A stretch of DNA of 57,456 nt from Vitrella brassicaformis CCMP3155 (Eukaryota; Protista; Chromerida). A model generated the notes under the pieces. The model was not told where the DNA came from, made no database searches, and worked only from the letters and a program-made list of their open reading frames with translations. The stretch covers positions 1-57,456 of the forward strand of contig CDMY01000525.1 in the NCBI GenBank assembly GCA_001179505.1, in the 5' to 3' direction. Made by a program: the position numbers and the translations under genes. Position 1 is the stretch's first letter; each line of letters starts with the position of its first letter. Below are positions 293-11,559 of this stretch, in pieces.

Positions 293-1339
293 ATGCCCGG
301 TGAGGTGCCTGTGGCTCGGCAGGTCCTCGGTGGGCTCAGCAGCCGCATCCCGTTGCTTATTCGCCAGCCCACGGCGAATCAAGCGACAGCGCTAGCACAC
401 TCGGCACACAGGGTGGCGGCGTCTGCCTGTCTGTCCAAGAGGCCGAGCAGCAGCGCATACCACCAACGTCAGCGACATGGCAACAATGTAAGAAAGATCT
501 AGACGAAAGGACGCCGACACTTGACATGGCTGTGGTGCGTGGTCCTGAAGGGTGTGGAGGTCCTCAATTCAGCGTTGACACGTGCCCTGGACGCAACACT
601 GGTGGGCCCAGGACAGGGCACTTACTCTATCTGTCGTGTTGGATGCGTCACCAGGACGTCTGTCTGCCTGCAGGAGGACAGCAGGGTCCGGTTGGCTCTG
701 AGATCTGCGCTTGCTCAGCAGGTGAGGTGGATGATTGTCACCCATTTCACGCACACACACACACAGAGATGACTGAGTGTGTGTTTGTTCGGTTGGTTCG
801 TTGGTGTCAGGCTGTGGTGGGCATCAGATCCCCTGTCCGCCCGGTGACGATTGAGGAGCCCTCTGCCGCACCCCCACGAACACACCCACACCCACACCCA
901 CTGCCGCCCACCACACCAAACACCAACAATCCAGGTACAGACACGCGAGACCACTCACACACACCGAGCATGACCATCTTGCCTTTTCGGTCGCTTGTGT
1001 GTGTGTGTGGCGTGATGCCGATCATCCGTCCATTAGATGCGGCCACCCCAGGGCGTAAGATAGAGCCCGCTGTGGGAGGTGATGTGTGCACTCCGGTTGA
1101 GGCGAAGCAGCCGGGCAAGAGCCACAAGAAGAAGCCCTACTGGTCAGAGATGCAGTGGTGGGAAAAGGTGAGGGAGTGAGTGAGCGAGTGAGTAGGTCAG
1201 GCACGGGAGAAGAGGAGGGCCGAGGGCGGCGTGAGAGTGCGCATGTGTGTGCTGTTGTGTGTGTATGTGTCAGGCCATCTGTGTCACGTGGTTCTTCCTG
1301 ATGATGTACGCCCTCATAGGCAACATTGACTGGATCTGA
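293..1339 (+). CDS. Hypothetical spliced protein with a C-terminal hydrophobic (possible tail-anchor) segment
   Basis: ATG at 293. Clear GT-AG intron at 722-810. The last exons read KKPYWSEMQWWEK|AICVTWFFLMMYALIGNIDWI*. Internal exon boundaries are uncertain and no family was recognised. Confidence 0.45.
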
Positions 1340-1980
1340 GAGAGAAAGAGAGAAAGAAGGGGCGTTTTTGCCCATCGACGGGTTGGCAAGTGGACCCGGT
1401 TGTCTTGATCTGCTATCCATCCATCCATCCATCCATTGCCTTGTGATGTATGTCGGCGTTCGCGCAGCTGCGTCCTCGGTGCCAGCCACGGCCGCCGAGG
1501 AGGGGGCTGTGCTGACGGTGTGGGGCATGACAAGGCCATGTGATGAGATGAGATTGCTGCTCGACCATCGCTCCCTGCCATATATATGTACACATGGCTG
1601 ACTGATACAGATACAATGGGTGTGGAGCTGCGTGCACTGGAGCAGACATCAATGTGGTGTGGGTCATCTTCCTGCCCCGCAGCAGGCAGTGAAGACGGTG
1701 CACTGCTTGGATGCGCTATGCGTCGTGTTCTGACTGCCGTGGAGCAGGTGGATGATCTGCAGCAGGTGGCGTGTGTCTGCTGCAATGCGTGTCAGTGTGT
1801 GTGGGGGGGTGCGATGTGACTTGAAGGACGAAGTGAAGTTGACAGACACACACATACGTCTTGAATCGTCTGTGTGTGGGTGACGTCGTTGATTGACCGA
1901 AGCTATGACGAGCTCGATCGTGTCCTTCATTCAAGCAGTGTCTGCCTTCCACCGCACCCAACCACACTCAAGTCAATTTA

Positions 1981-4900
1981 TTAGAGCTCTTCAGCCATCA
2001 GGGCCGACAGGGGCGACTGTGAGGGCGGAAAGCAGTGCTGGAACACACGCAGCGTAGAAGGCTCATCCTGGACACACACACCACACACACACAACAAGAC
2101 GTACAACACATACATACATACAAGAGATGCATGCCTTTTCCACACCCACCGATGGCAAAAACCGCACTTTCTGCACGGTGGTCTCGTCCAAGAGAAGCTG
2201 CACACACACAACACACACACGCACCAATGACTCCCTCCCTCCCTCCCTCCCTCCATGCCCCTCACCCAGCCCACACACCCTTTTTACCCGCAGCATGTCC
2301 CATGCAAGCCGCAGAGGCCAGGACGCCCGCCACACCAGCACCTCGCCCAGCCGCTCGGCATACACCTCGGTCAGGATGGGCAGCAGCTCCAGCAGCGGCT
2401 GCCAGGCCCCCCAGTGGGCGTAGCCGAAGCCCCTGCCGTCGATGAGCACCACCCACTGCTCCACATGAGGGGTATTCTGCAGCTGATGCAGGGCTTGTTC
2501 CAGCAGGTGCAGCAGGCACCACCTCAGGGCCTGCAGACGTCACATCATCACACGCATGACATGAAAGGTGTGCGTGTGGTGGTGGGCTACTGCAGGGTCG
2601 GCGGTGTTGTTGGATGTGATGCGTTGGAGGACGAACACGAGACAGGGCCGCTGGTGCACGTCGGACGCCCATAGGTGACCCCACCCTACACACACAAACA
2701 CACTCCTCCTCCATCCATCCATTCTCTCTCTGTCTGTCTCTCTGTTACGTGTGTCCATGTGTGGCTTGAGCCCCTCTGCGTGCAGGTGGATGGCCTCCAC
2801 GCCCGACTCCTTCCGCCAGTGGATCGCCCGCCGCAGCTGCAGCTCAGCCGCATCCACGTCCCACCCTCGCGCACTCAGGAACCGCAGCAAATCGCTCTCG
2901 CGCAAATCCAACACGGGAGGGCCGAACTCGCCACCCAGCTGCAGCTGACGGCGAAGGTCCGCTAAGGCCTGAGAGGAAGTGGGTGCAGTGTGTGTGTGTC
3001 TTGTGCGTGTGCTGTGTGTGTGTGTGTGTGGTGGCCGACCTTTCCCTGTCTTCTGCCGAGATCTTGCTGGCTGCGCAGCCACCTGGGGCGCTGGGAGGGG
3101 GGGACGGGGCGCAGATCAGAGAATGGCAGAGGGAGTGTGCAGAACACCCTGACACATACACAACACACAACACCGTACACGACGCAGCGCCCTGCACACG
3201 TGTGTGTGTGTGAGGGGTCACCTTGCGGCCGCATCGATGTCGTCTGGGTCTGTGTCCAGTGGCGAGCCTGGTGGGGAGGTGGTAGAGGTGGATTGGGGGC
3301 TGAAGGTGAGGCTGGGCAGGGGAGACGACCACTCGGACGCACCCAACTCACTCAACGGCATATCTACACCCCCCCCCCACACACACACACACATACAACA
3401 CGCCTTATCATCTCTCTCCCCCCTCCCTCCCTCCCTCCCTCACCGGCCTCATCGGATGACGTCAGGAACCCTCTCAGCTTCACAAGGTGGTCGAAGAAAC
3501 TCCGCACCAGCACACGCCTCACACCCACACCCCCGCCCAGCCACAGCGCCACCCCCCAGTAGGGCTGCCTGGGTGCCAGCCGCAGGCAGCATGACACATG
3601 ACACCGCTCGTTTGGCCGGGATGATGGGCCGACTCTCCATGAGACCAACTGGACGTCTGTGCGGACCGTCTGGGCGGCTCCCGAGAGCCATGGGAGAGGG
3701 AGAGTGGAAGACACAGAGAGGGGGAATGGTTTGGTGAGGGGGAGAGAGGTGCCGACGATGAACGACGTGCCGTCGGGGTCTGACAACAAGCAAACCATCG
3801 CAAACAGAGAGTGTGCGTGTTGTGTTGTCGTGTGGTGGGGTGCTCTGTCCACACGCACCTGTCCACCCAGTTCTGATGAGCCGATACTCCATGAGGGGGT
3901 TCCACGCGTGTCTGCCCCCCAGCACGCGCCACGGCACGCCCCACACGCCGCCCCACAGCCGATGTCGGTACCGGCAGACGTCGACCGGCTCGTCAGGCAC
4001 ACACTGCAGCAGCTGCCACTTGGTCTCCTGGAAGCCCAGGAAGCTCGATATGCCCCACGGCCGGCTCAGGTAGTGGAGGACGAGGGCCCTTGGCGCGTGG
4101 ATGGTCATGCTGCACTTCCACCTGTGGGGGTCCCTTCTGTGCCGATAGATGCGGCACCCACCCTCACCGCTTGACAACACCCAACTGCCGACAGCAACGA
4201 GAAGAAGACAACACTATCATCATCATTATCGCACCTACTAGCACTTCAGCCTGGCCGTTTTCTTACTTGTCGCTGCCGTCATGCAGGCCGCTTTGTGGCT
4301 GCTCGACACATGGCGCGAGGACAGGGGGGACAGATGAGGGTTCGGGTGGGCCAGGACAGGGGTGGATAGTCTCAGCGGTCAGGCGGATGCCGCTGGGGGT
4401 GTGGTCGTGCATGAAGGTGTCCAGCGGGGGCAGCACCGGCTGGGGCGGCGAGTCGAAGGCCTCGATCGCATCCAGTATGCCGTCATACCTGCAAACATCC
4501 ATCCATCCATCCGTCCGTCCGTCCGTCGAGGGAGGGAGGGAGGGAGGGAGGGATGGCCTGCCTGCCTGCCTGCCCGCCTTGTTCACGCCCACCATCTCTT
4601 TGCCTCGTCCTCATGGTAGTGTCCCAGGTGTGCGATGCCCCACCCGTCCTCCTCCACCCCCACAGGCGCCCAGCTGCCCATCCAGCCCGTCGACGCAACA
4701 GTTGACGAAATACCACCACCAGAAGAGAGTGCCCGCCGATCTGTCGGCTGCAGCTGCAGTTTCGGCGGTGTGTCGGTAGGCCAGCGGATCACAAACGACC
4801 ACATCCCGGCCGCCCTGTCGACGTGGTCGTCCGCTGGGCTGAACAGGCCTGCATTGGCGCAACGACTCACACACATAGTGGTGAGGGGGTTTATATAAGG

Positions 4901-6089
4901 GGTGGTGGTGGTGGGTGTCTGTACCTTCGATGACGGCTTGGTCGAGCGGGATGACCACTCTGGGCTCGCGCGAGGCCGGCGTGTCAAAGCATCGCAGCAT
5001 GCACCCAGACGTGTCCATCACGCAGTACCGGTCCACCCAGCTCCCTCCCCCTGTAACAGTCAACTCCTGCATGGGAGCGACCAGGCACAACACACACACA
5101 CACACACACACGTACACGTCACAATCAAGCCTCTTGGCGCCATCCCTGACACACACAGGGGTGTGTTCTGCCGGCCCACCTTTTGGTAGAGCATGCCCTT
5201 GAAGCGTTGCTGTATGGCGGCGATGCGCCTGGGGCTGCTGGCTGTGGAGGGGGGGTGGGTCTCCTCACAGTGGCTGGTGTTGTTGGCCGACAGCTGCGGC
5301 GACCGCACCACCACACCCCCACCGCCACCCACACCCATCATCCCACCCGGCATCGACAGCGGCGGACGGCCACCCCCGCCGCCTGAGCCTGCCTGCTCAA
5401 ACCGCATGGGTAGCTCCTGCTGTCCGTGTGGCTCTGACTGTGTTTGTGGCGGCGGCTGTGGGCGTCCTCCATCTGTCGGCTCTGCAGCTGGTGGTGCTGA
5501 TGGGGGGATGGACACAGGGAGGGGCGACGGCGCCCGGCCAGTGTCTGTGCGGCGGATAAATGGCGGCATCTGCCCGTGCCTTGGAGAGAGAGAGCGCGGC
5601 GATGAGGGCGGGTCTTTGTGCCGTCGTGTGTCGATGGCTGTCTTGTGGTCGAGCCAAGAGGGGAAGAGGGAGTCGACGATGGCCACGAAGTGAGAGGAGG
5701 CGCTCTCTTTCGACCCGTGGAAGGACGCCCGAAGCCATCCCTCCTGAAGCAACAAGCAAGGAACGAACGACGCAACCACAGACAGACACACGATATAGTC
5801 TGCTTCTCTCCTCTCTGTCCCTGTGTGAGTGATTGTCTGCTGACCGACCCATTTCCTTCTGTCGATTTCAGTGGCATCATGTGGTCGGGGCGTGGTGCAC
5901 TCGCCGTGCAGCGCGTATTTGCACAAACCTGAGGCGACGCCACAAACCTGATGTCCTCACTCACCAGTCTGTCCATCCCATCTGCCTTATCTCACCGTAG
6001 AGCCTGGACCAGTCGTCGATGGTGACCTGCTGCTGGTACCCGTCCAGATGGGCCACGAAATCCGACGCTTGCGCGAACCTTTCGTCCAT
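1981..6089 (-). CDS. Multidomain lipid-binding/transfer protein: ACBP - PH - START - CRAL-TRIO (Sec14)
   Basis: ACBP at about 6089-5654 (FAQASDFVAHL...LYG|LCKYALHGECTTPRP...RRKW|EGW...SKESASSHFVAIVDSLFPSW). PH at about 5200-4450 (FKGMLYQK|...SWVDRYCVMD...VIPLDQA...EDEAKRW|YDGILDAI). START at about 4170-3470 (RIYRH...YRLIRTGWT|DPDGTSFIVGTS...TVRT...RCHVSCCLRL). Sec14 at about 2960-2050 (DLLRFLSARGWDVDAA...WRK, VLIDGRGF, YAERL, LLDETTVQKVRF). All are co-oriented and joined by GT-AG introns. Confidence 0.8.
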
Positions 6090-6275
6090 CGTCACACCCA
6101 AGTTATGCGCGCTTAGCCTCACGGCTGGTGTGGATCTCCCCACTCTGTGGTTTCTGGCAAAGGGGGCTGCTTCTTCTGTACTCTAGTAGCGCAGATCCTC
6201 TTGACGAAATTACCAACGAACCTCGTCGGCGATCCGCAAGCTTTTGTGTGTGTTTGTGTGTGGCAAGCAGGAGGC

Positions 6276-7517
6276 ATGCCATTGGGAGGTCGCCCACTGT
6301 TTCCAGAAATCGTCAACGCTCATCATCGCATCGCGCCACACGTGGTGGGTGAGCAGCAAAGGCAGCCGCAGGGAGAGAAGCGGACAGAGGCAAGGGCCCA
6401 CGATGCTCTGTTGCTTGCGTCTGTCGTTAATGTGTTGGTTTTGCCCAGCGTGAGACGGGCTGCGATGAGTCGCCGTTTCTGTCAGATCTCACCGGCGCGA
6501 GTGTCTTTCTGAAACACGAGCACCACCAGATCACCGGATCATTCAAGTAACTAACTAACATGCATTAATGGCAGGCACTCTGTCTGCAGTGCAGATGAGA
6601 TAGACTCCCTCTGTGCGCGTGTCTGTCCGCAGGCTCCGCGGTGCTCTCAACAAGATCCTCGCGAACGAGTCGGCCTGCCGCGACAAGGGCGTCATCGTCG
6701 CGTCATCGGGCAACCACGGCATCGCATGCTGTGCCGCCGCCGCGAAACTGGGCACTACTCACGGCGAAAACGGCGAAAAGACGATCAGCGTGACGGTGTG
6801 CGTGCCATCGAGTGTGTCCGAAGCCAAGCGGTCGTTGATGGAGCACTACGGCGCCCATATCATCACAGTGGAGGGCGACTGCGTCAACAGCGAGGCTCGC
6901 GCGCGGCGAGAGGCGGATGAGCGTGGGATGGTGCTGGTGCACCCCTACAACGACATGCAAGTGATGGCGGGCCAGGGGACTATCGGCATCGAACTCAACG
7001 CCGTCCAGAACGTCGCAGCGGTGTTTCTCTCTGTGGGCGGTGGCGGGATTGTGTCTGGTGTCGGAACGGCCATCAAGCCTTCCAGCCCCATTGCCTGGTC
7101 GTCGCGTGCCACGCCGCCAACTCGTGCGTCATGTATGAGAGTCTCAAAGCTGGGCGGACACTGGCCGCAGATGAGGTCGACCAGAAGCCCACGCTGTGTG
7201 ACGGTGTGGCTGGGGGAATCGAGCACAACTGCGTGACGTTCGTGCACTGCCGCGATGTCATCGACCACCATGTGGTGGTGAGCGAGGCTGAGGTGCGTGA
7301 GGCCATGAAATGGATGGCGGAGTCCGAGCACTTCATCGTCGAGGGCGCGGCTGCTCTGGCCGTGGCAGGGCTGGTCAAGAGCTTGAGATAGCCGGGGAGG
7401 TCGGGGGAGCGGTTTGGGCACCCGCCGCCACTGTGTGGCAAGAAGGTGGTGGCGGTGCTGTGTGGACGGAATATCAGCTTTGATACCTTCATGGCTGCCG
7501 TGGGCAGCGCGGGGTAG
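6276..7517 (+). pseudogene. PLP-dependent serine/threonine dehydratase (serine racemase-like, no ACT domain), disrupted in this assembly
   Basis: Spliced reading EIVNAHHRIAPHV|RETG...VFLKHEHHQITGSFK|LRGALNK, then SSGNH, HPYND, GQGTIG, VGGGG, EGAAA and VVAVLCGRN. There is a 1-nt frameshift at about 7077 and an in-frame TAG at 7389-7391. Confidence 0.8.
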
Positions 7518-7983: not shown

Positions 7984-8893
7984 CTAAATCTCCTCGCCCT
8001 CCAGCTCAATGGAGTTCTCACGGAAGGGGATTCTGCTCACACACACACATAAATGAATGGCACACCCACCATGCCATCCATACACAGGCGTCAGTTACAT
8101 CAGACAGGGGGCGTGTATTGTATGGCCAGCAGGCAGGCTGACCTGTTGTTGAGTTGTGGTCTGATTCGAGCCATCTTGCTCTGCAGCACCGTCTGGCACA
8201 CCACGCCGATCTTCAGCTCCATCTGACGGATCTCAGCCTACACACACACACACACCCGTCACGCCCACACACATGCACACACGGAGCGATTTGCCTGCAT
8301 GGTCACCTTGAGTTTCTTGAGAGTGTCTTTGACTTTGACGAGCGGCGACGAGTCCGTCACGGTGGACGAACGGTCCTCGAGCTCTTGCTGCACTCATGCC
8401 ATGCCATGACACACGCGTCAGATGAGGGTGTGTTGTGTGCTCTGTGTGTCATGTTGTGTCGGTGTGTCTGTCGACCTTGAGGTTGTCTTCCTGCTCGGTG
8501 AGCATCTTGAGCTCCGTCTGCAGGTTGGTCACCGTGTCATTCAGCTCGGTGTAGCGCTGCTGCGTCTGGTTGGCGAATGGGGGTGTGGGGGNNNNNNNNN
8601 NNNNNNNNNNNNNNNNNNNNNNNNNNNNNNNNNNNNNNNNNNNNNNNNNNNNNNNNNNNNNNNNNNNNNNNNNNNNNNNNNNNNNNNNNNNNNNNNNNNN
8701 NNNNNNNNNNNNNNNNNNNNNNNNNNNNNNNNNNNNNNNNNNNNNNNNNNNNNNNNNNNNNNNNNNNNNNNNNNNNNNNNNNNNNNNNNNNNNNNNNNNN
8801 NNNNNNNNNNNNNNNNNNNNNNNNNNNNNNNNNNNNNNNNNNNNNNNNNNNNNNNNNNNNNNNNNNNNNNNNNNNNNNNNNNNNNNNNNNNAT

Positions 8894-8928
<35 letters not shown>

Positions 8929-11559
8929 AACGGACACCAACACACAAATGATTTGACCTGTTGTTGGTGTCGTATTGTGTGTGTGCGGCCCCCCGACCTT
9001 GCGCAGGTCCTGCTGGACGTGCTGGTGATCCAACGCCTGAGGGATGCACCCACCGCAACAGACACATAGATGATACTGACCGATGAAGTATTCTCGGAAC
9101 TGACCAGGTGTTCGAACTGCTGGTTGATGAAGGCCTCCTTATTGCGCACACGCTCCAACGCACCGCCAATCTGACATGCGATTAACACCCACACCCATAT
9201 GGCCACAGATGAGGTGGTTAGGTCAGACACTCCCCAGCCCTCACATCACCTCCTGTGATATTTTGTTGAGCTGTCCGCTGGCCGTCGGCAGATGCTCGTC
9301 CACTGTCTGAACAACACAGGCTCACATCACACCATCCACTTGTGTGTGCGTGTGGGTCTGGTTGGCACCAGACATACCTTCTTGAATACTTGTGTCTGCT
9401 CGAGGTGTGTGCGCCACTCCTTGGGGTCGTGCGGCATCGTCACCTTCAGCTTGGGCGTCACACGCTGATCGACACACAGACCGTTGGAACACAGATCCAT
9501 GTGAGTGGCGGGCGGCCACCGGGCACTCATTGAAGCATTGAAGCATCGAGGCCTAACTGACCTCTAGTTCGAGGGCCCACTCGTGTGGGTCCACCTGGGT
9601 CTCCAGCAAACCCTGCTCCTCACTGCGCACAAAGAGCCAGAGAGGGGCCATATCGTATTACATCATGAGTGCAGCCATTCACCGACTGACCGTTCTTCGT
9701 CGGTTTTCTTGTCTGCGGTGTGTACGACCTCCGAGTACATGACGTCCTCGTCGTCCTCGGCGGCCGCGATGTCCTCCTCTAGTAACACCAAACAAGCCAC
9801 ACACATGGAAGCGAAGCATCAACCAGGCAGACAGGACGGATGACTCACACACACATGCCCACCCCACCCACGTACGTACGCGTACCCATGTCTTCTGCGT
9901 TGATCTCGGCCTCCTCATCGACCTCCGCCTCGTCATCTTGACTGATAGATAGACACAAACAGACACCCACCCACCGGTACACACGCCTGCGATGTGAATG
10001 TGTCGCTGTCTATAGTCCATCCATTCCATGGCTACCTTACCCCTCGTCGGGGAACTGTGGTGGCTGGAACTGGAAGCGGCGCGCCTGCAACACCTGCAAG
10101 GCGGTTGATGGACGAATGGACAAAGCGAAGAGGTGACTTGACAACACTGAGCGTGTTGGTGTGCGGTAGACTTGCCTACCGCCCTGAGGAGGGTGTGTAT
10201 GAGGTTGCAGGTGAACTCCCCATACGCCTGACGTGATCAGAGAGATCGATACCACACCACACCCAGGCAGAAGAGATCGATGCCATCCACGCAGAATATC
10301 TTGGTCGGTGCGGCCANNNNNNNNNNNNNNNNNNNNNNNNNNNNNNNNNNNNNNNNNNNNNNNNNNNNNNNNNNNNNNNNNNNNNNNNNNNNNNNNNNNN
10401 NNNNNNNNNNNNNNNNNNNNNNNNNNNNNNNNNNNNNNNNNNNNNNNNNNNNNNNNNNNNNNNNNNNNNNNNNNNNNNNNNNNNNNNNNNNNNNNNNNNN
10501 NNNNNNNNNNNNNNNNNNNNNNNNNNNNNNNNNNNNNNNNNNNNNNNNNNNNNNNNNNNNNNNNNNNNNNNNNNNNNNNNNNNNNNNNNNNNNNNNNNNN
10601 NNNNNNNNNNNNNNNNCCCACCCCACCCACCTGTTTGAGTTTCTGCGGCGTCACCTCCATGCCCAGATCCAACTCCTGTAGGGCTACCACTGCAGTGCGA
10701 TGCAACCAAACCAAACCAACCAGCCATTCCACACAACACACACATACACACACACACACACAGAAGATTTGACACAAAGCATGTGTGCTGTGTGTGTGTG
10801 CCCATTGATGTCACTGACAGAGGTTGGTTGCGATGGTGTTGGGGTCATCGTAGGCGGAGAAACTCGGCTGCCTGCACAACACAACACAACACAACACCAC
10901 AACACACTACAACACAACACAACACAACTCAACCAGCAATGCGCGGGCAAACAAGTGCCGTCATATATGTCAATCACAATTACTTTCCCAGCTGCTGCAG
11001 CAACCAATACACCAGCCTGAACACAGACACACACACGGAGGGCACACACAATGCACCCGTCATGGCCGTCCAGCAAGTGTGTGTGTAGTGTGTGTCCGCC
11101 ATACGAGTGGAAGTAGGTGAGCTGCAGGGCAACGTTCGGCGCAGGGAACGAGAAATAAGACGCCGTGATGGGCGACAGCTCCCTGCAACCATTCACAAAC
11201 CAGTCATCACTCACACACACACACCCTGATGCATTCTACACGCTCCGTGCTCACTTGTTGCAGAACTGGGTCTCATAGTCGAGCAGCTTGAGCATCTCGA
11301 GGATCTCCTCATTCACAGCCAACACATCCGCCTCCAGCGACACCCCGCCAGCGGCACTGCCACCGCCGCCAGCGGGCCCGCTACGACGCTCCCTCTCCCC
11401 GCCTGTGGTGGTTGTGGCTGTGGGCGAGCCTGTATCCTCACCCTCACCGCCTCCCTCGGGGCGCGATGCCAGCTGCAGATGGTCGTCGACACACAGGCAT
11501 CTGACGTGGATTGGTGTGGATCTTGAAAGATCAGTGTCTGTTACCTTTCTGCTCGCCAT
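7984..11559 (-). CDS. IFT57: Intraflagellar transport protein 57 (HIPPI)
   Basis: EILEMLKLLDYETQFC; KEWRTHLEQ; LERVRNKEAFINQQFEHL; TVTDSSPLVKVKDTLKKLK; IRQMELKIGVVCQTVLQ. Two N-gaps lie inside the gene. Confidence 0.9.
8592..8891. other. Scaffold gap (300 N) followed by a G homopolymer of about 34 nt
   Basis: Seen directly in the sequence. Confidence 0.99.
10317..10616. other. Scaffold gap (300 N) inside IFT57
   Basis: Seen directly in the sequence. Confidence 0.99.

What the first reader, a model, noticed from the sequence alone, without database searches (positions are those of the whole stretch)
1981..6089. Four lipid-binding modules fused in one protein: ACBP-PH-START-Sec14
Seen: splicing across the introns joins motifs of an acyl-CoA-binding domain, a PH domain, a START domain resembling that of plant EDR2 (DPDGTSFIVGTS...TVRT...RCHVSCCLRL) and a CRAL-TRIO domain into one minus-strand gene, which no single ORF in the track shows. 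Known: PH-START occurs in CERT and EDR2 membrane-contact-site proteins, Sec14 domains exchange PI/PC, and ACBP binds acyl-CoA. I do not know of this four-way combination. Inference: a lipid counter-exchange or sensing machine at a membrane contact site that couples acyl-CoA status to lipid transfer.
Basis: partly seen in the sequence, partly recalled or inferred. Interest (0 to 1): 0.88.

Follow-up and report, generated by a model that had tools for sequence, protein, structure and literature searches.

The report
Four-module lipid-binding protein gene in Vitrella
One spliced 15-exon gene of the alga Vitrella brassicaformis encodes a 987-residue soluble protein carrying an acyl-CoA-binding domain, a PH domain, a very divergent START-like domain and a Sec14 domain; I found this combination described nowhere, but it fits a known habit of this lineage of fusing lipid-transfer modules.

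Summary
Spliced RNA contigs and reading-frame bookkeeping give one minus-strand gene: 15 exons, ATG at 6089, stop at 1981-1983, 987 aa. It is letter-for-letter the public model CEM20323.1 / A0A0G4FYN0 of Vitrella brassicaformis CCMP3155, named only 'CRAL-TRIO domain-containing protein'.

- **ACBP:** 48 bits, above Pfam's threshold.
- **CRAL_TRIO:** 72 bits, above threshold.
- **PH:** just under threshold (22.7 against 25.1 bits), but its ESM model matches PH folds.
- **START:** no sequence match anywhere. Its ESM Atlas model matches only START families at TM 0.60-0.69, with EDR2-like first. My two AlphaFold models were too poor to use.

No transmembrane helix, signal peptide or FFAT motif was found, so the 'membrane contact site' reading is not shown. 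The Sec14 domain keeps three of four PtdIns-barcode residues and lacks the three PtdCho-barcode residues that could be aligned.

No protein of comparable length resembled it. A review's figure legend lists acyl-CoA-binding and PH domains among T. gondii and P. falciparum Sec14-like proteins. The scan's earlier unchecked notes report PITP+PH+START+ORD fusions elsewhere in this genome.

Verdict: real, moderately interesting, a new variant of a known kind.

The parts
1981..6089 (-). Whole coding span of the gene: 15 exons, 14 introns of 60-113 nt, 987 codons plus stop. Exons (high to low coordinate): 6089-5996, 5928-5849, 5743-5180, 5066-4925, 4848-4593, 4488-4267, 4184-3859, 3779-3444, 3363-3222, 3148-3040, 2968-2749, 2685-2591, 2530-2288, 2197-2150, 2067-1981.
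   Evidence: Spliced RNA contigs; GT..AG refinement; length and frame bookkeeping; identical to public protein P0001.
5648..6086 (-). Acyl-CoA-binding (ACBP) domain, aa 2-90, spread over exons 1-3. It starts at residue 2, so there is no N-terminal targeting peptide.
   Evidence: Pfam PF00887 at 48.2 bits, E 1.3e-12. PDB sequence hits to ACBD6, ACBPs and ECI2, E 3.5e-7 to 1e-4. Y31, K35 and K57 are kept and F77 replaces Tyr.
5222..5647 (-). Linker 1, aa 91-232: 50% Pro/Ser/Thr/Gly, with Gly runs. It lies in the same exon (exon 3) as the end of ACBP and the start of PH.
   Evidence: Composition; exon map.
4440..5221 (-). PH domain, aa about 233-395, exons 3-6, with a long insert before the last strand. 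The C-terminal helix carries the conserved Trp (W379).
   Evidence: Pfam PF00169 E 1.4e-4, 22.7 bits, below the 25.1 cut-off. ESM Atlas structure TM 0.56-0.63 to ten cluster sets, nine of which carry Pfam PH.
3448..4304 (-). START-like domain, aa about 441-672, exons 6-8.
   Evidence: ESM Atlas structure search: TM 0.60-0.69 over 183-210 residues to ten cluster sets, nine with Pfam START (EDR2-like, CERT, STARD13, STARD3-like and others) plus Plasmodium Fam-a; feature score 0.95. No Pfam, PDB or homologue hit.
3040..3447 (-). Linker 3, aa 673-757, rich in Ser/Thr/Pro, exons 8-10.
   Evidence: Composition.
1984..2968 (-). Sec14 module, aa 758-987: CRAL_TRIO_N (aa about 758-830) plus CRAL_TRIO (aa 838-966), exons 11-15.
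   Evidence: Pfam PF00650 at 71.6 bits, E 8e-20; PF03765 weak. PDB sequence hits to CSR1/Sfh2 5e-9, SEC14L2 2.5e-8, Sec14p 2e-7. R791, T950 and K953 match Sec14p R65, T236 and K239; G792 replaces K66; L846, W888 and V890 replace the PtdCho residues Y122, S173 and T175.
5994..6343 (.). 5' region shared with the divergent PALP gene. The transcript contig is continuous here. An in-frame stop lies upstream of ATG 6089, so the N-terminus is fixed.

Best explanation
A single nuclear gene of Vitrella brassicaformis makes one soluble, probably cytosolic, 987-aa protein. From N to C it carries an acyl-CoA-binding four-helix domain, a disordered linker, a PH domain, a highly divergent START-type lipid pocket, a second linker, and a Sec14 (CRAL_TRIO_N + CRAL_TRIO) lipid pocket.

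Shown: one reading frame, four modules, no membrane anchor, and no targeting peptide seen.

Inferred: it is a peripheral multi-pocket lipid-transfer or lipid-presenting protein. The core is a CERT/EDR2-like PH-START unit that has gained an ACBP head and a Sec14 tail. The Sec14 pocket probably still takes phosphatidylinositol, because three of the four exemplar PtdIns-barcode residues are kept. It probably takes a second ligand other than phosphatidylcholine, because the PtdCho-barcode residues that could be aligned are all replaced. The ACBP head probably still binds long-chain acyl-CoA, because three of four contact residues are kept. The most likely working mode is that the PH domain, and the pockets' own membrane-docking faces, bring the protein to a membrane. 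There two different lipids and an acyl-CoA are held in one complex, linking PI presentation or transfer with lipid remodelling. Whether the pockets exchange lipids in a coupled way is unknown.
For: - **One gene.** Spliced contigs from runs X5, X6 and X1 give joints that all have minus-strand GT..AG ends. The ORF runs unbroken across all 14 junctions. The ACBP end and the PH start share exon 3. The model is identical to the public protein.
- **Domains.** Pfam finds ACBP and CRAL_TRIO above threshold and PH close to it. PDB sequence hits go to Sec14-family proteins and ACBPs. The ESM Atlas gives fold matches for PH and START. For the whole protein, the nearest named clusters are EDR2-like PH/START, SEC14L1 and CERT.
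- **Ligand residues.** Taken from the alignments. The Sec14p barcode is as listed in PMC4945147.
- **Soluble.** The highest Kyte-Doolittle score over 19 residues is 1.06, and ACBP starts at residue 2.
- **Lineage context.** A PITP-PH-OSBP fusion is reported in T. gondii, and acyl-CoA-binding and PH domains are listed among apicomplexan Sec14-like proteins (PMC10543664).
Against: - The START module has no sequence-level support. Pfam, PDB, a phmmer scan of 1.84 billion representatives with exon 8, a word-index search and a metagenome scan were all blank or spurious.
- Both AlphaFold single-sequence models were unusable, with mean pLDDT of 36.8 and 35.5. The fold evidence therefore comes from one predictor only.
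- PH is below Pfam's gathering score and has no PDB sequence hit.
- K66 of the PtdIns barcode is Gly, and Tyr73 of ACBP is Phe.
- Contigs have no strand and merge neighbouring genes, so a full-length single mRNA molecule was not directly seen.
- No binding or transfer activity has been tested.
Confidence: 0.62

Rival explanations
1. It is functionally a two-module ACBP + Sec14 protein. The central PH-like and START-like stretch is a decayed remnant or a mere spacer that no longer binds lipid or membrane.
For: Only ACBP and CRAL_TRIO pass Pfam thresholds. The START region is a sequence orphan. By eye the PH lacks the canonical basic motif, and it has a long insert. The Atlas model of the whole protein is of low confidence: pTM 0.33, pLDDT 0.54.
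Against: About 440 residues are kept in frame across five exons. The ESM model of aa 430-680 matches nine START-family cluster sets plus Fam-a, with about 200 residues aligned. The language-model feature score is 0.95, a level reached by about 1 in 100 shuffled proteins. The region is rich in Trp and Cys and low in disorder-type residues, unlike the real linkers.
Confidence: 0.2
2. The central domain is folded but is not START proper. It would be another member of the Bet v1/SRPBCC-like helix-grip superfamily, for example PRELI-like as in SEC14L1, or a lineage-specific fold.
For: There is no PF01852 hit even at E 10. In the whole-protein structure search the best row is a PRELI + CRAL_TRIO cluster (SEC14L1-like) aligned over aa 471-987.
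Against: In the domain-only search, nine of the ten listed cluster sets carry PF01852 and the tenth is Plasmodium Fam-a, which is START-like by my recollection; none carries PRELI. PH-START is an established pairing.
Confidence: 0.1
3. The fusion is an artefact of assembly or annotation: two or more adjacent genes whose transcripts were merged.
For: The same contig also runs into the neighbouring genes on both sides, so contig continuity alone proves nothing. In run X6 the contigs break inside exon 3.
Against: The frame stays open through every junction for 987 codons. All junctions have the same strand sense. The X6 break lies inside one exon, in a Gly-rich low-complexity run. No in-frame stop or plausible internal start and terminator signal was seen. 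Two domain boundaries (ACBP to PH, and PH to START) lie within exons or across observed junctions.
Confidence: 0.05

Closest known systems
CERT (STARD11) and plant EDR2: PH-START proteins
   Same: Same order of PH then START, and these are the best fold and feature matches for the central part. Both are soluble proteins that meet membranes peripherally.
   Different: There is no FFAT motif (CERT) and no EDR2_C/DUF1336 domain (EDR2). The START here is undetectable by sequence. ACBP and Sec14 modules are added at the two ends.
SEC14L1 (PRELI/MSF1 + CRAL_TRIO_N + CRAL_TRIO + GOLD)
   Same: A second lipid-binding domain (PRELI) sits N-terminal to a Sec14 module in one chain. It is the best whole-protein structural row, with aa 471-987 aligned.
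   Different: PRELI rather than START. It has a GOLD domain, which is absent here, and no ACBP or PH.
T. gondii multidomain lipid-transfer proteins: TgME49_289570 (PITP-PH-OSBP), and the apicomplexan Sec14-like proteins drawn with 'A-CoA' and PH domains
   Same: They come from the same wider lineage (apicomplexans and chromerids), join several lipid-transfer modules with a PH domain, and pair an acyl-CoA-binding domain with CRAL-TRIO (PMC10543664).
   Different: I could not see the figure or fetch the sequences, so neither orthology nor the presence of a START-like module in those proteins could be tested. The text describes at least three T. gondii candidates as about 2,000 aa, against 987 aa here.
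ACBD3 (ACBP + GOLD) and other extended ACBD proteins
   Same: An N-terminal ACBP domain is used as the head of a larger membrane-associated adaptor (PMC7057175).
   Different: The partner domains named in the passages I retrieved from that review (ankyrin, kelch, GOLD, enoyl-CoA hydratase, transmembrane/FFAT) do not include PH, START or Sec14.
Yeast Sec14p and its Sfh homologues
   Same: The CRAL_TRIO_N + CRAL_TRIO fold aligns over about 210 residues. The R65, T236 and K239 equivalents are kept.
   Different: K66 is replaced by Gly. The PtdCho barcode is absent (Y122 to Leu, S173 to Trp, T175 to Val). It is embedded in a four-module protein.

Membership tests
ACBP (Pfam PF00887) | Profile score above Pfam's gathering threshold over the whole domain | tested here: met
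   48.2 bits against 28.3; profile positions 1-76 of 76; aa 2-81.
ACBP (Pfam PF00887) | Acyl-CoA contact residues (bovine ACBP Y28, K32, K54, Y73; numbering recalled from memory) | tested here: inconclusive
   Y31, K35 and K57 are kept; F77 replaces Y73 (alignments; positions). Binding was not assayed.
PH domain (Pfam PF00169) | Profile score above the gathering threshold | tested here: not met
   22.7 bits against 25.1, E 1.4e-4. No PDB sequence hit.
PH domain (Pfam PF00169) | Beta-sandwich capped by a C-terminal helix carrying the conserved Trp | tested here: met
   The ESM Atlas model has TM 0.56-0.63 to ten cluster sets, nine of which carry Pfam PH. W379 sits in the predicted C-terminal helix. 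This rests on a predicted model only.
START (Pfam PF01852) | Profile or sequence similarity to START domains | tested here: not met
   No Pfam hit at E up to 10, no PDB hit, and no homologue.
START (Pfam PF01852) | Helix-grip fold of about 200 residues | tested here: met
   The ESM Atlas model of aa 430-680 has TM 0.60-0.69 over 183-210 aligned residues. Nine of the ten cluster sets listed carry PF01852 and one is Plasmodium Fam-a. This comes from one predictor only; AlphaFold gave no usable model.
Sec14 / CRAL-TRIO (PF00650 with PF03765) | Profile score above the gathering threshold | tested here: met
   CRAL_TRIO scores 71.6 bits against 22.6. CRAL_TRIO_N is sub-threshold at 17.8-19.2 bits against 23. 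Sec14p, SEC14L2 and CSR1 align over aa about 750-965.
Sec14-type PtdIns/PtdCho exchange proteins | PtdIns barcode (R65, K66, T236, K239) and PtdCho barcode (Y111, Y122, Y151, S173, T175), as listed in PMC4945147 | tested here: not met
   PtdIns barcode: R791, T950 and K953 are kept, and G792 replaces K66. PtdCho barcode: Y122 to L846, S173 to W888, T175 to V890. It is therefore not a classical PI/PC exchanger. PI binding remains plausible.
CERT-like contact-site transfer proteins | FFAT motif between PH and START for VAP binding | tested here: not met
   A regular-expression scan found no FFAT-like core in the linkers. The only xFFD string (aa 655) lies inside the START C-terminal helix and has a basic flank. 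This was a simple scan, not the full scoring matrix.
EDR2 family | C-terminal EDR2_C / DUF1336 domain after PH-START | tested here: not met
   No PF07059 hit. The C-terminus is a Sec14 module instead.

The most novel reading that the evidence does not exclude
This is a lineage-restricted four-pocket lipid protein whose ACBP head physically couples acyl-CoA supply or sensing to a PI-presenting Sec14 pocket and a second START pocket. That would make it a self-contained 'remodel and move' unit with no described counterpart. Its START domain would be so diverged that sequence methods miss it, which would imply that more hidden START modules exist in alveolate proteomes.
Probability: 0.25. Interest if true: 0.65.

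Novelty: new variant of a known kind. Interest (0 to 1): 0.45.

Why it matters
Lipid-transfer proteins usually carry one pocket plus targeting modules. Chains with two different pockets, such as SEC14L1 or the T. gondii PITP-PH-OSBP protein, are used as arguments that lipid fluxes are physically coupled. A chain with three pockets (ACBP, START, Sec14) plus a PH domain would be an extreme natural case. It occurs in a free-living photosynthetic relative of apicomplexan parasites, where Sec14-like and START-like proteins are essential genes and are being considered as drug targets. It also shows that public annotation, which records only ACBP and CRAL_TRIO, misses half of the modules, because the PH and START parts are visible only at the fold level. 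The practical value is modest until binding or transfer is measured.

Tried and rejected
- **Pfam on raw ORF pieces and single exons**. This gave only weak partial hits. It was superseded once the full protein id was found.
- **Exon 8 against 1.84 billion representatives**. It returned only the protein itself and P0002. BLASTP showed P0002 to be a repeat protein matching by composition, so I rejected it as spurious.
- **Three word-index homologue searches**: whole protein, Sec14 region, and START region alone. They found nothing but the protein itself. The first two were run at E 0.001 scaled to 5.8 billion sequences and restricted to proteins of 0.55-1.75 times the query length. That combination hides weak true relatives and the roughly 2,000-aa T. 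gondii proteins, so absence of orthologues is not shown.
- **Metagenome locus scan**: nothing found.
- **AlphaFold2 without an alignment**, on the full protein and on aa 228-680: mean pLDDT 36.8 and 35.5. Foldseek on the second model against PDB and Swiss-Prot gave only noise and was discarded.
- **PDB sequence searches** with the PH and START parts: no meaningful hit.
- **FFAT, transmembrane and signal scan**: negative.
- **Literature searches for the four-way or ACBP + CRAL-TRIO combination**. The only relevant item was the Figure 8 legend of PMC10543664. Its supplement did not identify the gene.
- **Enumerating the three unobserved introns.** Many combinations satisfied length and frame. 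I kept the one that respects contiguous contig pieces, normal intron length and Sec14 homology. It equals the public model.
Full report
**Where and what.** The window is contig CDMY01000525.1 of Vitrella brassicaformis CCMP3155, assembly GCA_001179505.1. This is a photosynthetic chromerid, a close relative of apicomplexan parasites. Between 1981 and 6089 no single ORF is long. The minus-strand frames nevertheless hold recognisable pieces of ACBP, PH and CRAL-TRIO domains.

**Gene model.** I laid the contigs of four public runs on 1201-6700. Runs X5, X6 and X1 behave as RNA, because their contigs are spliced. X7 behaves as DNA, because its contigs are unspliced.

- One X5 contig of 5,734 nt crosses the whole locus.
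- Eight listed joints have CT..AC ends on the plus strand, which is GT..AG on the minus strand: 2529>2590, 3147>3221, 3779>3859, 4184>4267, 4847>4924, 5065>5179, 5742>5848 and 5926>5994.
- Three more introns follow from the ends of adjacent contig pieces: 2969-3039, 4489-4592 and 3364-3443.
- After shifting each joint by 0-2 nt to the GT..AG position, the frame stays open from ATG 6089 through all of them.

Three further introns fall in low-complexity stretches where the tool dropped joints. I placed them from the contig's own letter count: 608 nt lie between window 2067 and 3040, so 235 nt of extra intron are needed. I also required GT-AG ends, an open frame, contiguous contig pieces and Sec14 homology. 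That gives 2686-2748, 2198-2287 and 2068-2149.

The result is 15 exons, 14 introns of 60-113 nt and 987 codons. A phmmer scan of 1.84 billion representative proteins with exon 8 returned a 987-aa protein, P0001. It is identical to my model. It is CEM20323.1 / UniRef100_A0A0G4FYN0, named 'CRAL-TRIO domain-containing protein', with only ACBP and CRAL_TRIO precomputed.

An in-frame stop lies upstream of the ATG within the continuous transcript. The N-terminus is therefore fixed, and ACBP begins at residue 2.

**Is it one transcript?** Contigs carry no strand, and this one also runs into both neighbours. The joints at 6343>6448 and 6546>6633 are GT..AG on the plus strand and belong to the divergent PALP gene. 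Contig continuity alone therefore proves nothing. The argument for one product has three parts:
- the open frame through 14 same-sense junctions;
- the end of ACBP and the first PH strand lying in one exon (exon 3);
- the PH-to-START and START-to-Sec14 links crossing observed or bookkept junctions.

The contig break in X6 lies inside exon 3, in a Gly-rich run. I put the chance that this is a merger of separate genes at about 5%.

**Domains.**
- **ACBP, aa 2-90.** Pfam gives 48.2 bits, E 1.3e-12, covering the full profile. PDB sequence hits go to ACBD6, several ACBPs and ECI2. Y31, K35 and K57 align with the acyl-CoA contact residues, and F77 replaces the fourth, a Tyr. The bovine numbering is recalled from memory.
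- **PH, aa about 233-395.** Pfam gives 22.7 bits, E 1.4e-4, just under the gathering score. There is no PDB sequence hit. The ESM Atlas model of this part matches ten cluster sets at TM 0.56-0.63, nine of which carry Pfam PH. By eye it has the strands, a long insert, and the C-terminal helix with the conserved Trp (W379). It lacks the canonical basic K/R-x-R at the start of strand 2.
- **START-like, aa about 441-672.** There is no sequence support of any kind. The Atlas structure search gives TM 0.60-0.69 with 183-210 residues aligned. Nine of the ten listed cluster sets carry PF01852 (EDR2-like first, then fungal START, STARD13, STARD3-like, CERT and others) and one is the Plasmodium Fam-a proteins. 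The language-model feature score is 0.95, with a haptophyte cluster in which a quarter of members carry START. By eye the strand pattern of exons 7-8 also reads like START. I rate START fold at about 80-85%.
- **Sec14, aa 758-987.** CRAL_TRIO scores 71.6 bits, E 8e-20, and CRAL_TRIO_N is weak. Alignments to CSR1/Sfh2, SEC14L2 and Sec14p cover aa about 750-965.

My two AlphaFold2 single-sequence models were unusable, and Foldseek on one of them returned noise. All fold evidence is therefore from ESMFold models held by the Atlas.

**Ligand clues.** PMC4945147 lists the Sec14p barcodes as R65/K66/T236/K239 for PtdIns and Y111/Y122/Y151/S173/T175 for PtdCho. In the Sec14p alignment, the Vitrella protein has R791, G792, T950 and K953 at the PtdIns positions. 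It has L846, W888 and V890 at Y122, S173 and T175. PI binding is therefore plausible, PC binding is unlikely, and the second ligand is unknown. This is the pattern PMC4945147 describes for plant Sec14-like proteins outside the Sec14-nodulin group.

**Localisation clues.** There is no hydrophobic segment (highest KD19 score 1.06), no N-terminal extension and no FFAT-like motif in the linkers. It could still hold through PH and pocket-face binding or through partner proteins.

**Relatives and precedent.** No protein of 0.55-1.75 times its length matched in the 5.8-billion-cluster collection. No ESM Atlas cluster of at least 50 members combines ACBP with START or CRAL_TRIO; the nearest named clusters are EDR2-like PH/START, SEC14L1 (PRELI + CRAL_TRIO) and CERT. 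These searches are insensitive, because of the strict E-value scaling and the length filter, so orthologues in Chromera or apicomplexans are not excluded.

In the literature I found no description of the four-way fusion. PMC10543664 does report a T. gondii PITP-PH-OSBP protein. [quoted passage not shown] I could not see the figure or fetch those sequences.

The scan's own earlier first-reader notes, which are unchecked, report PITP+PH+START+ORD fusions on other pieces of this genome. Taken together, fusing lipid-transfer modules looks like a habit of this lineage, and this gene is a new and unusually rich example.

**Verdict.** Novelty is a new variant of a known kind. Interest is moderate.

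Noticed in passing
window 6100-7500 (+ strand): A divergent PALP (pyridoxal-phosphate enzyme, 272 aa) gene lies head-to-head with this gene. Its plus-strand introns are 6344-6447 and 6547-6632. Its likely ATG is near 6270, only about 180 nt from the ATG of the lipid gene at 6089. The RNA contig is continuous across both, so the 5' UTRs overlap or share a bidirectional promoter.
   Followed up: partly
window 323-1902 (+ strand): A 194-aa gene without any Pfam family (annotated at 323-1339) has an intron at about 1166-1271. Its transcript runs to about 1902 at roughly ten times the depth of the lipid gene in run X1. Its 3' end overlaps the convergent 3' UTR of the lipid gene, which reaches at least 1879.
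   Followed up: partly
window about 8590-8890: An assembly gap (a run of N) is flanked by long G/C homopolymer-like runs that translate as poly-Gly or poly-Pro in several frames. Local GC falls to 0.25 in the composition profile because of the N run.
   Followed up: no
introns of the gene, e.g. 2068-2099, 2198-2263, 2700-2745, 4500-4590; also 1408-1443: The introns repeatedly contain the same low-complexity motifs: GGAGGGAGG-type, GATGGATGG-type and CA/TG dinucleotide runs, which translate as [15 protein letters not shown] and HTHTHT. Read laying treated several of them as repeats and dropped joints there.
   Followed up: no
window 7984-11559 (- strand): An IFT57 (intraflagellar transport) gene of 441 aa lies just beyond the PALP gene, according to the public gene calls.
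   Followed up: no
window 5277-5342 (exon 3): In run X6 the transcript assembly breaks inside the Gly-rich part of exon 3 (aa about 180-205), whereas X5 spans it. This is probably a low-complexity assembly break rather than an isoform boundary.
   Followed up: no
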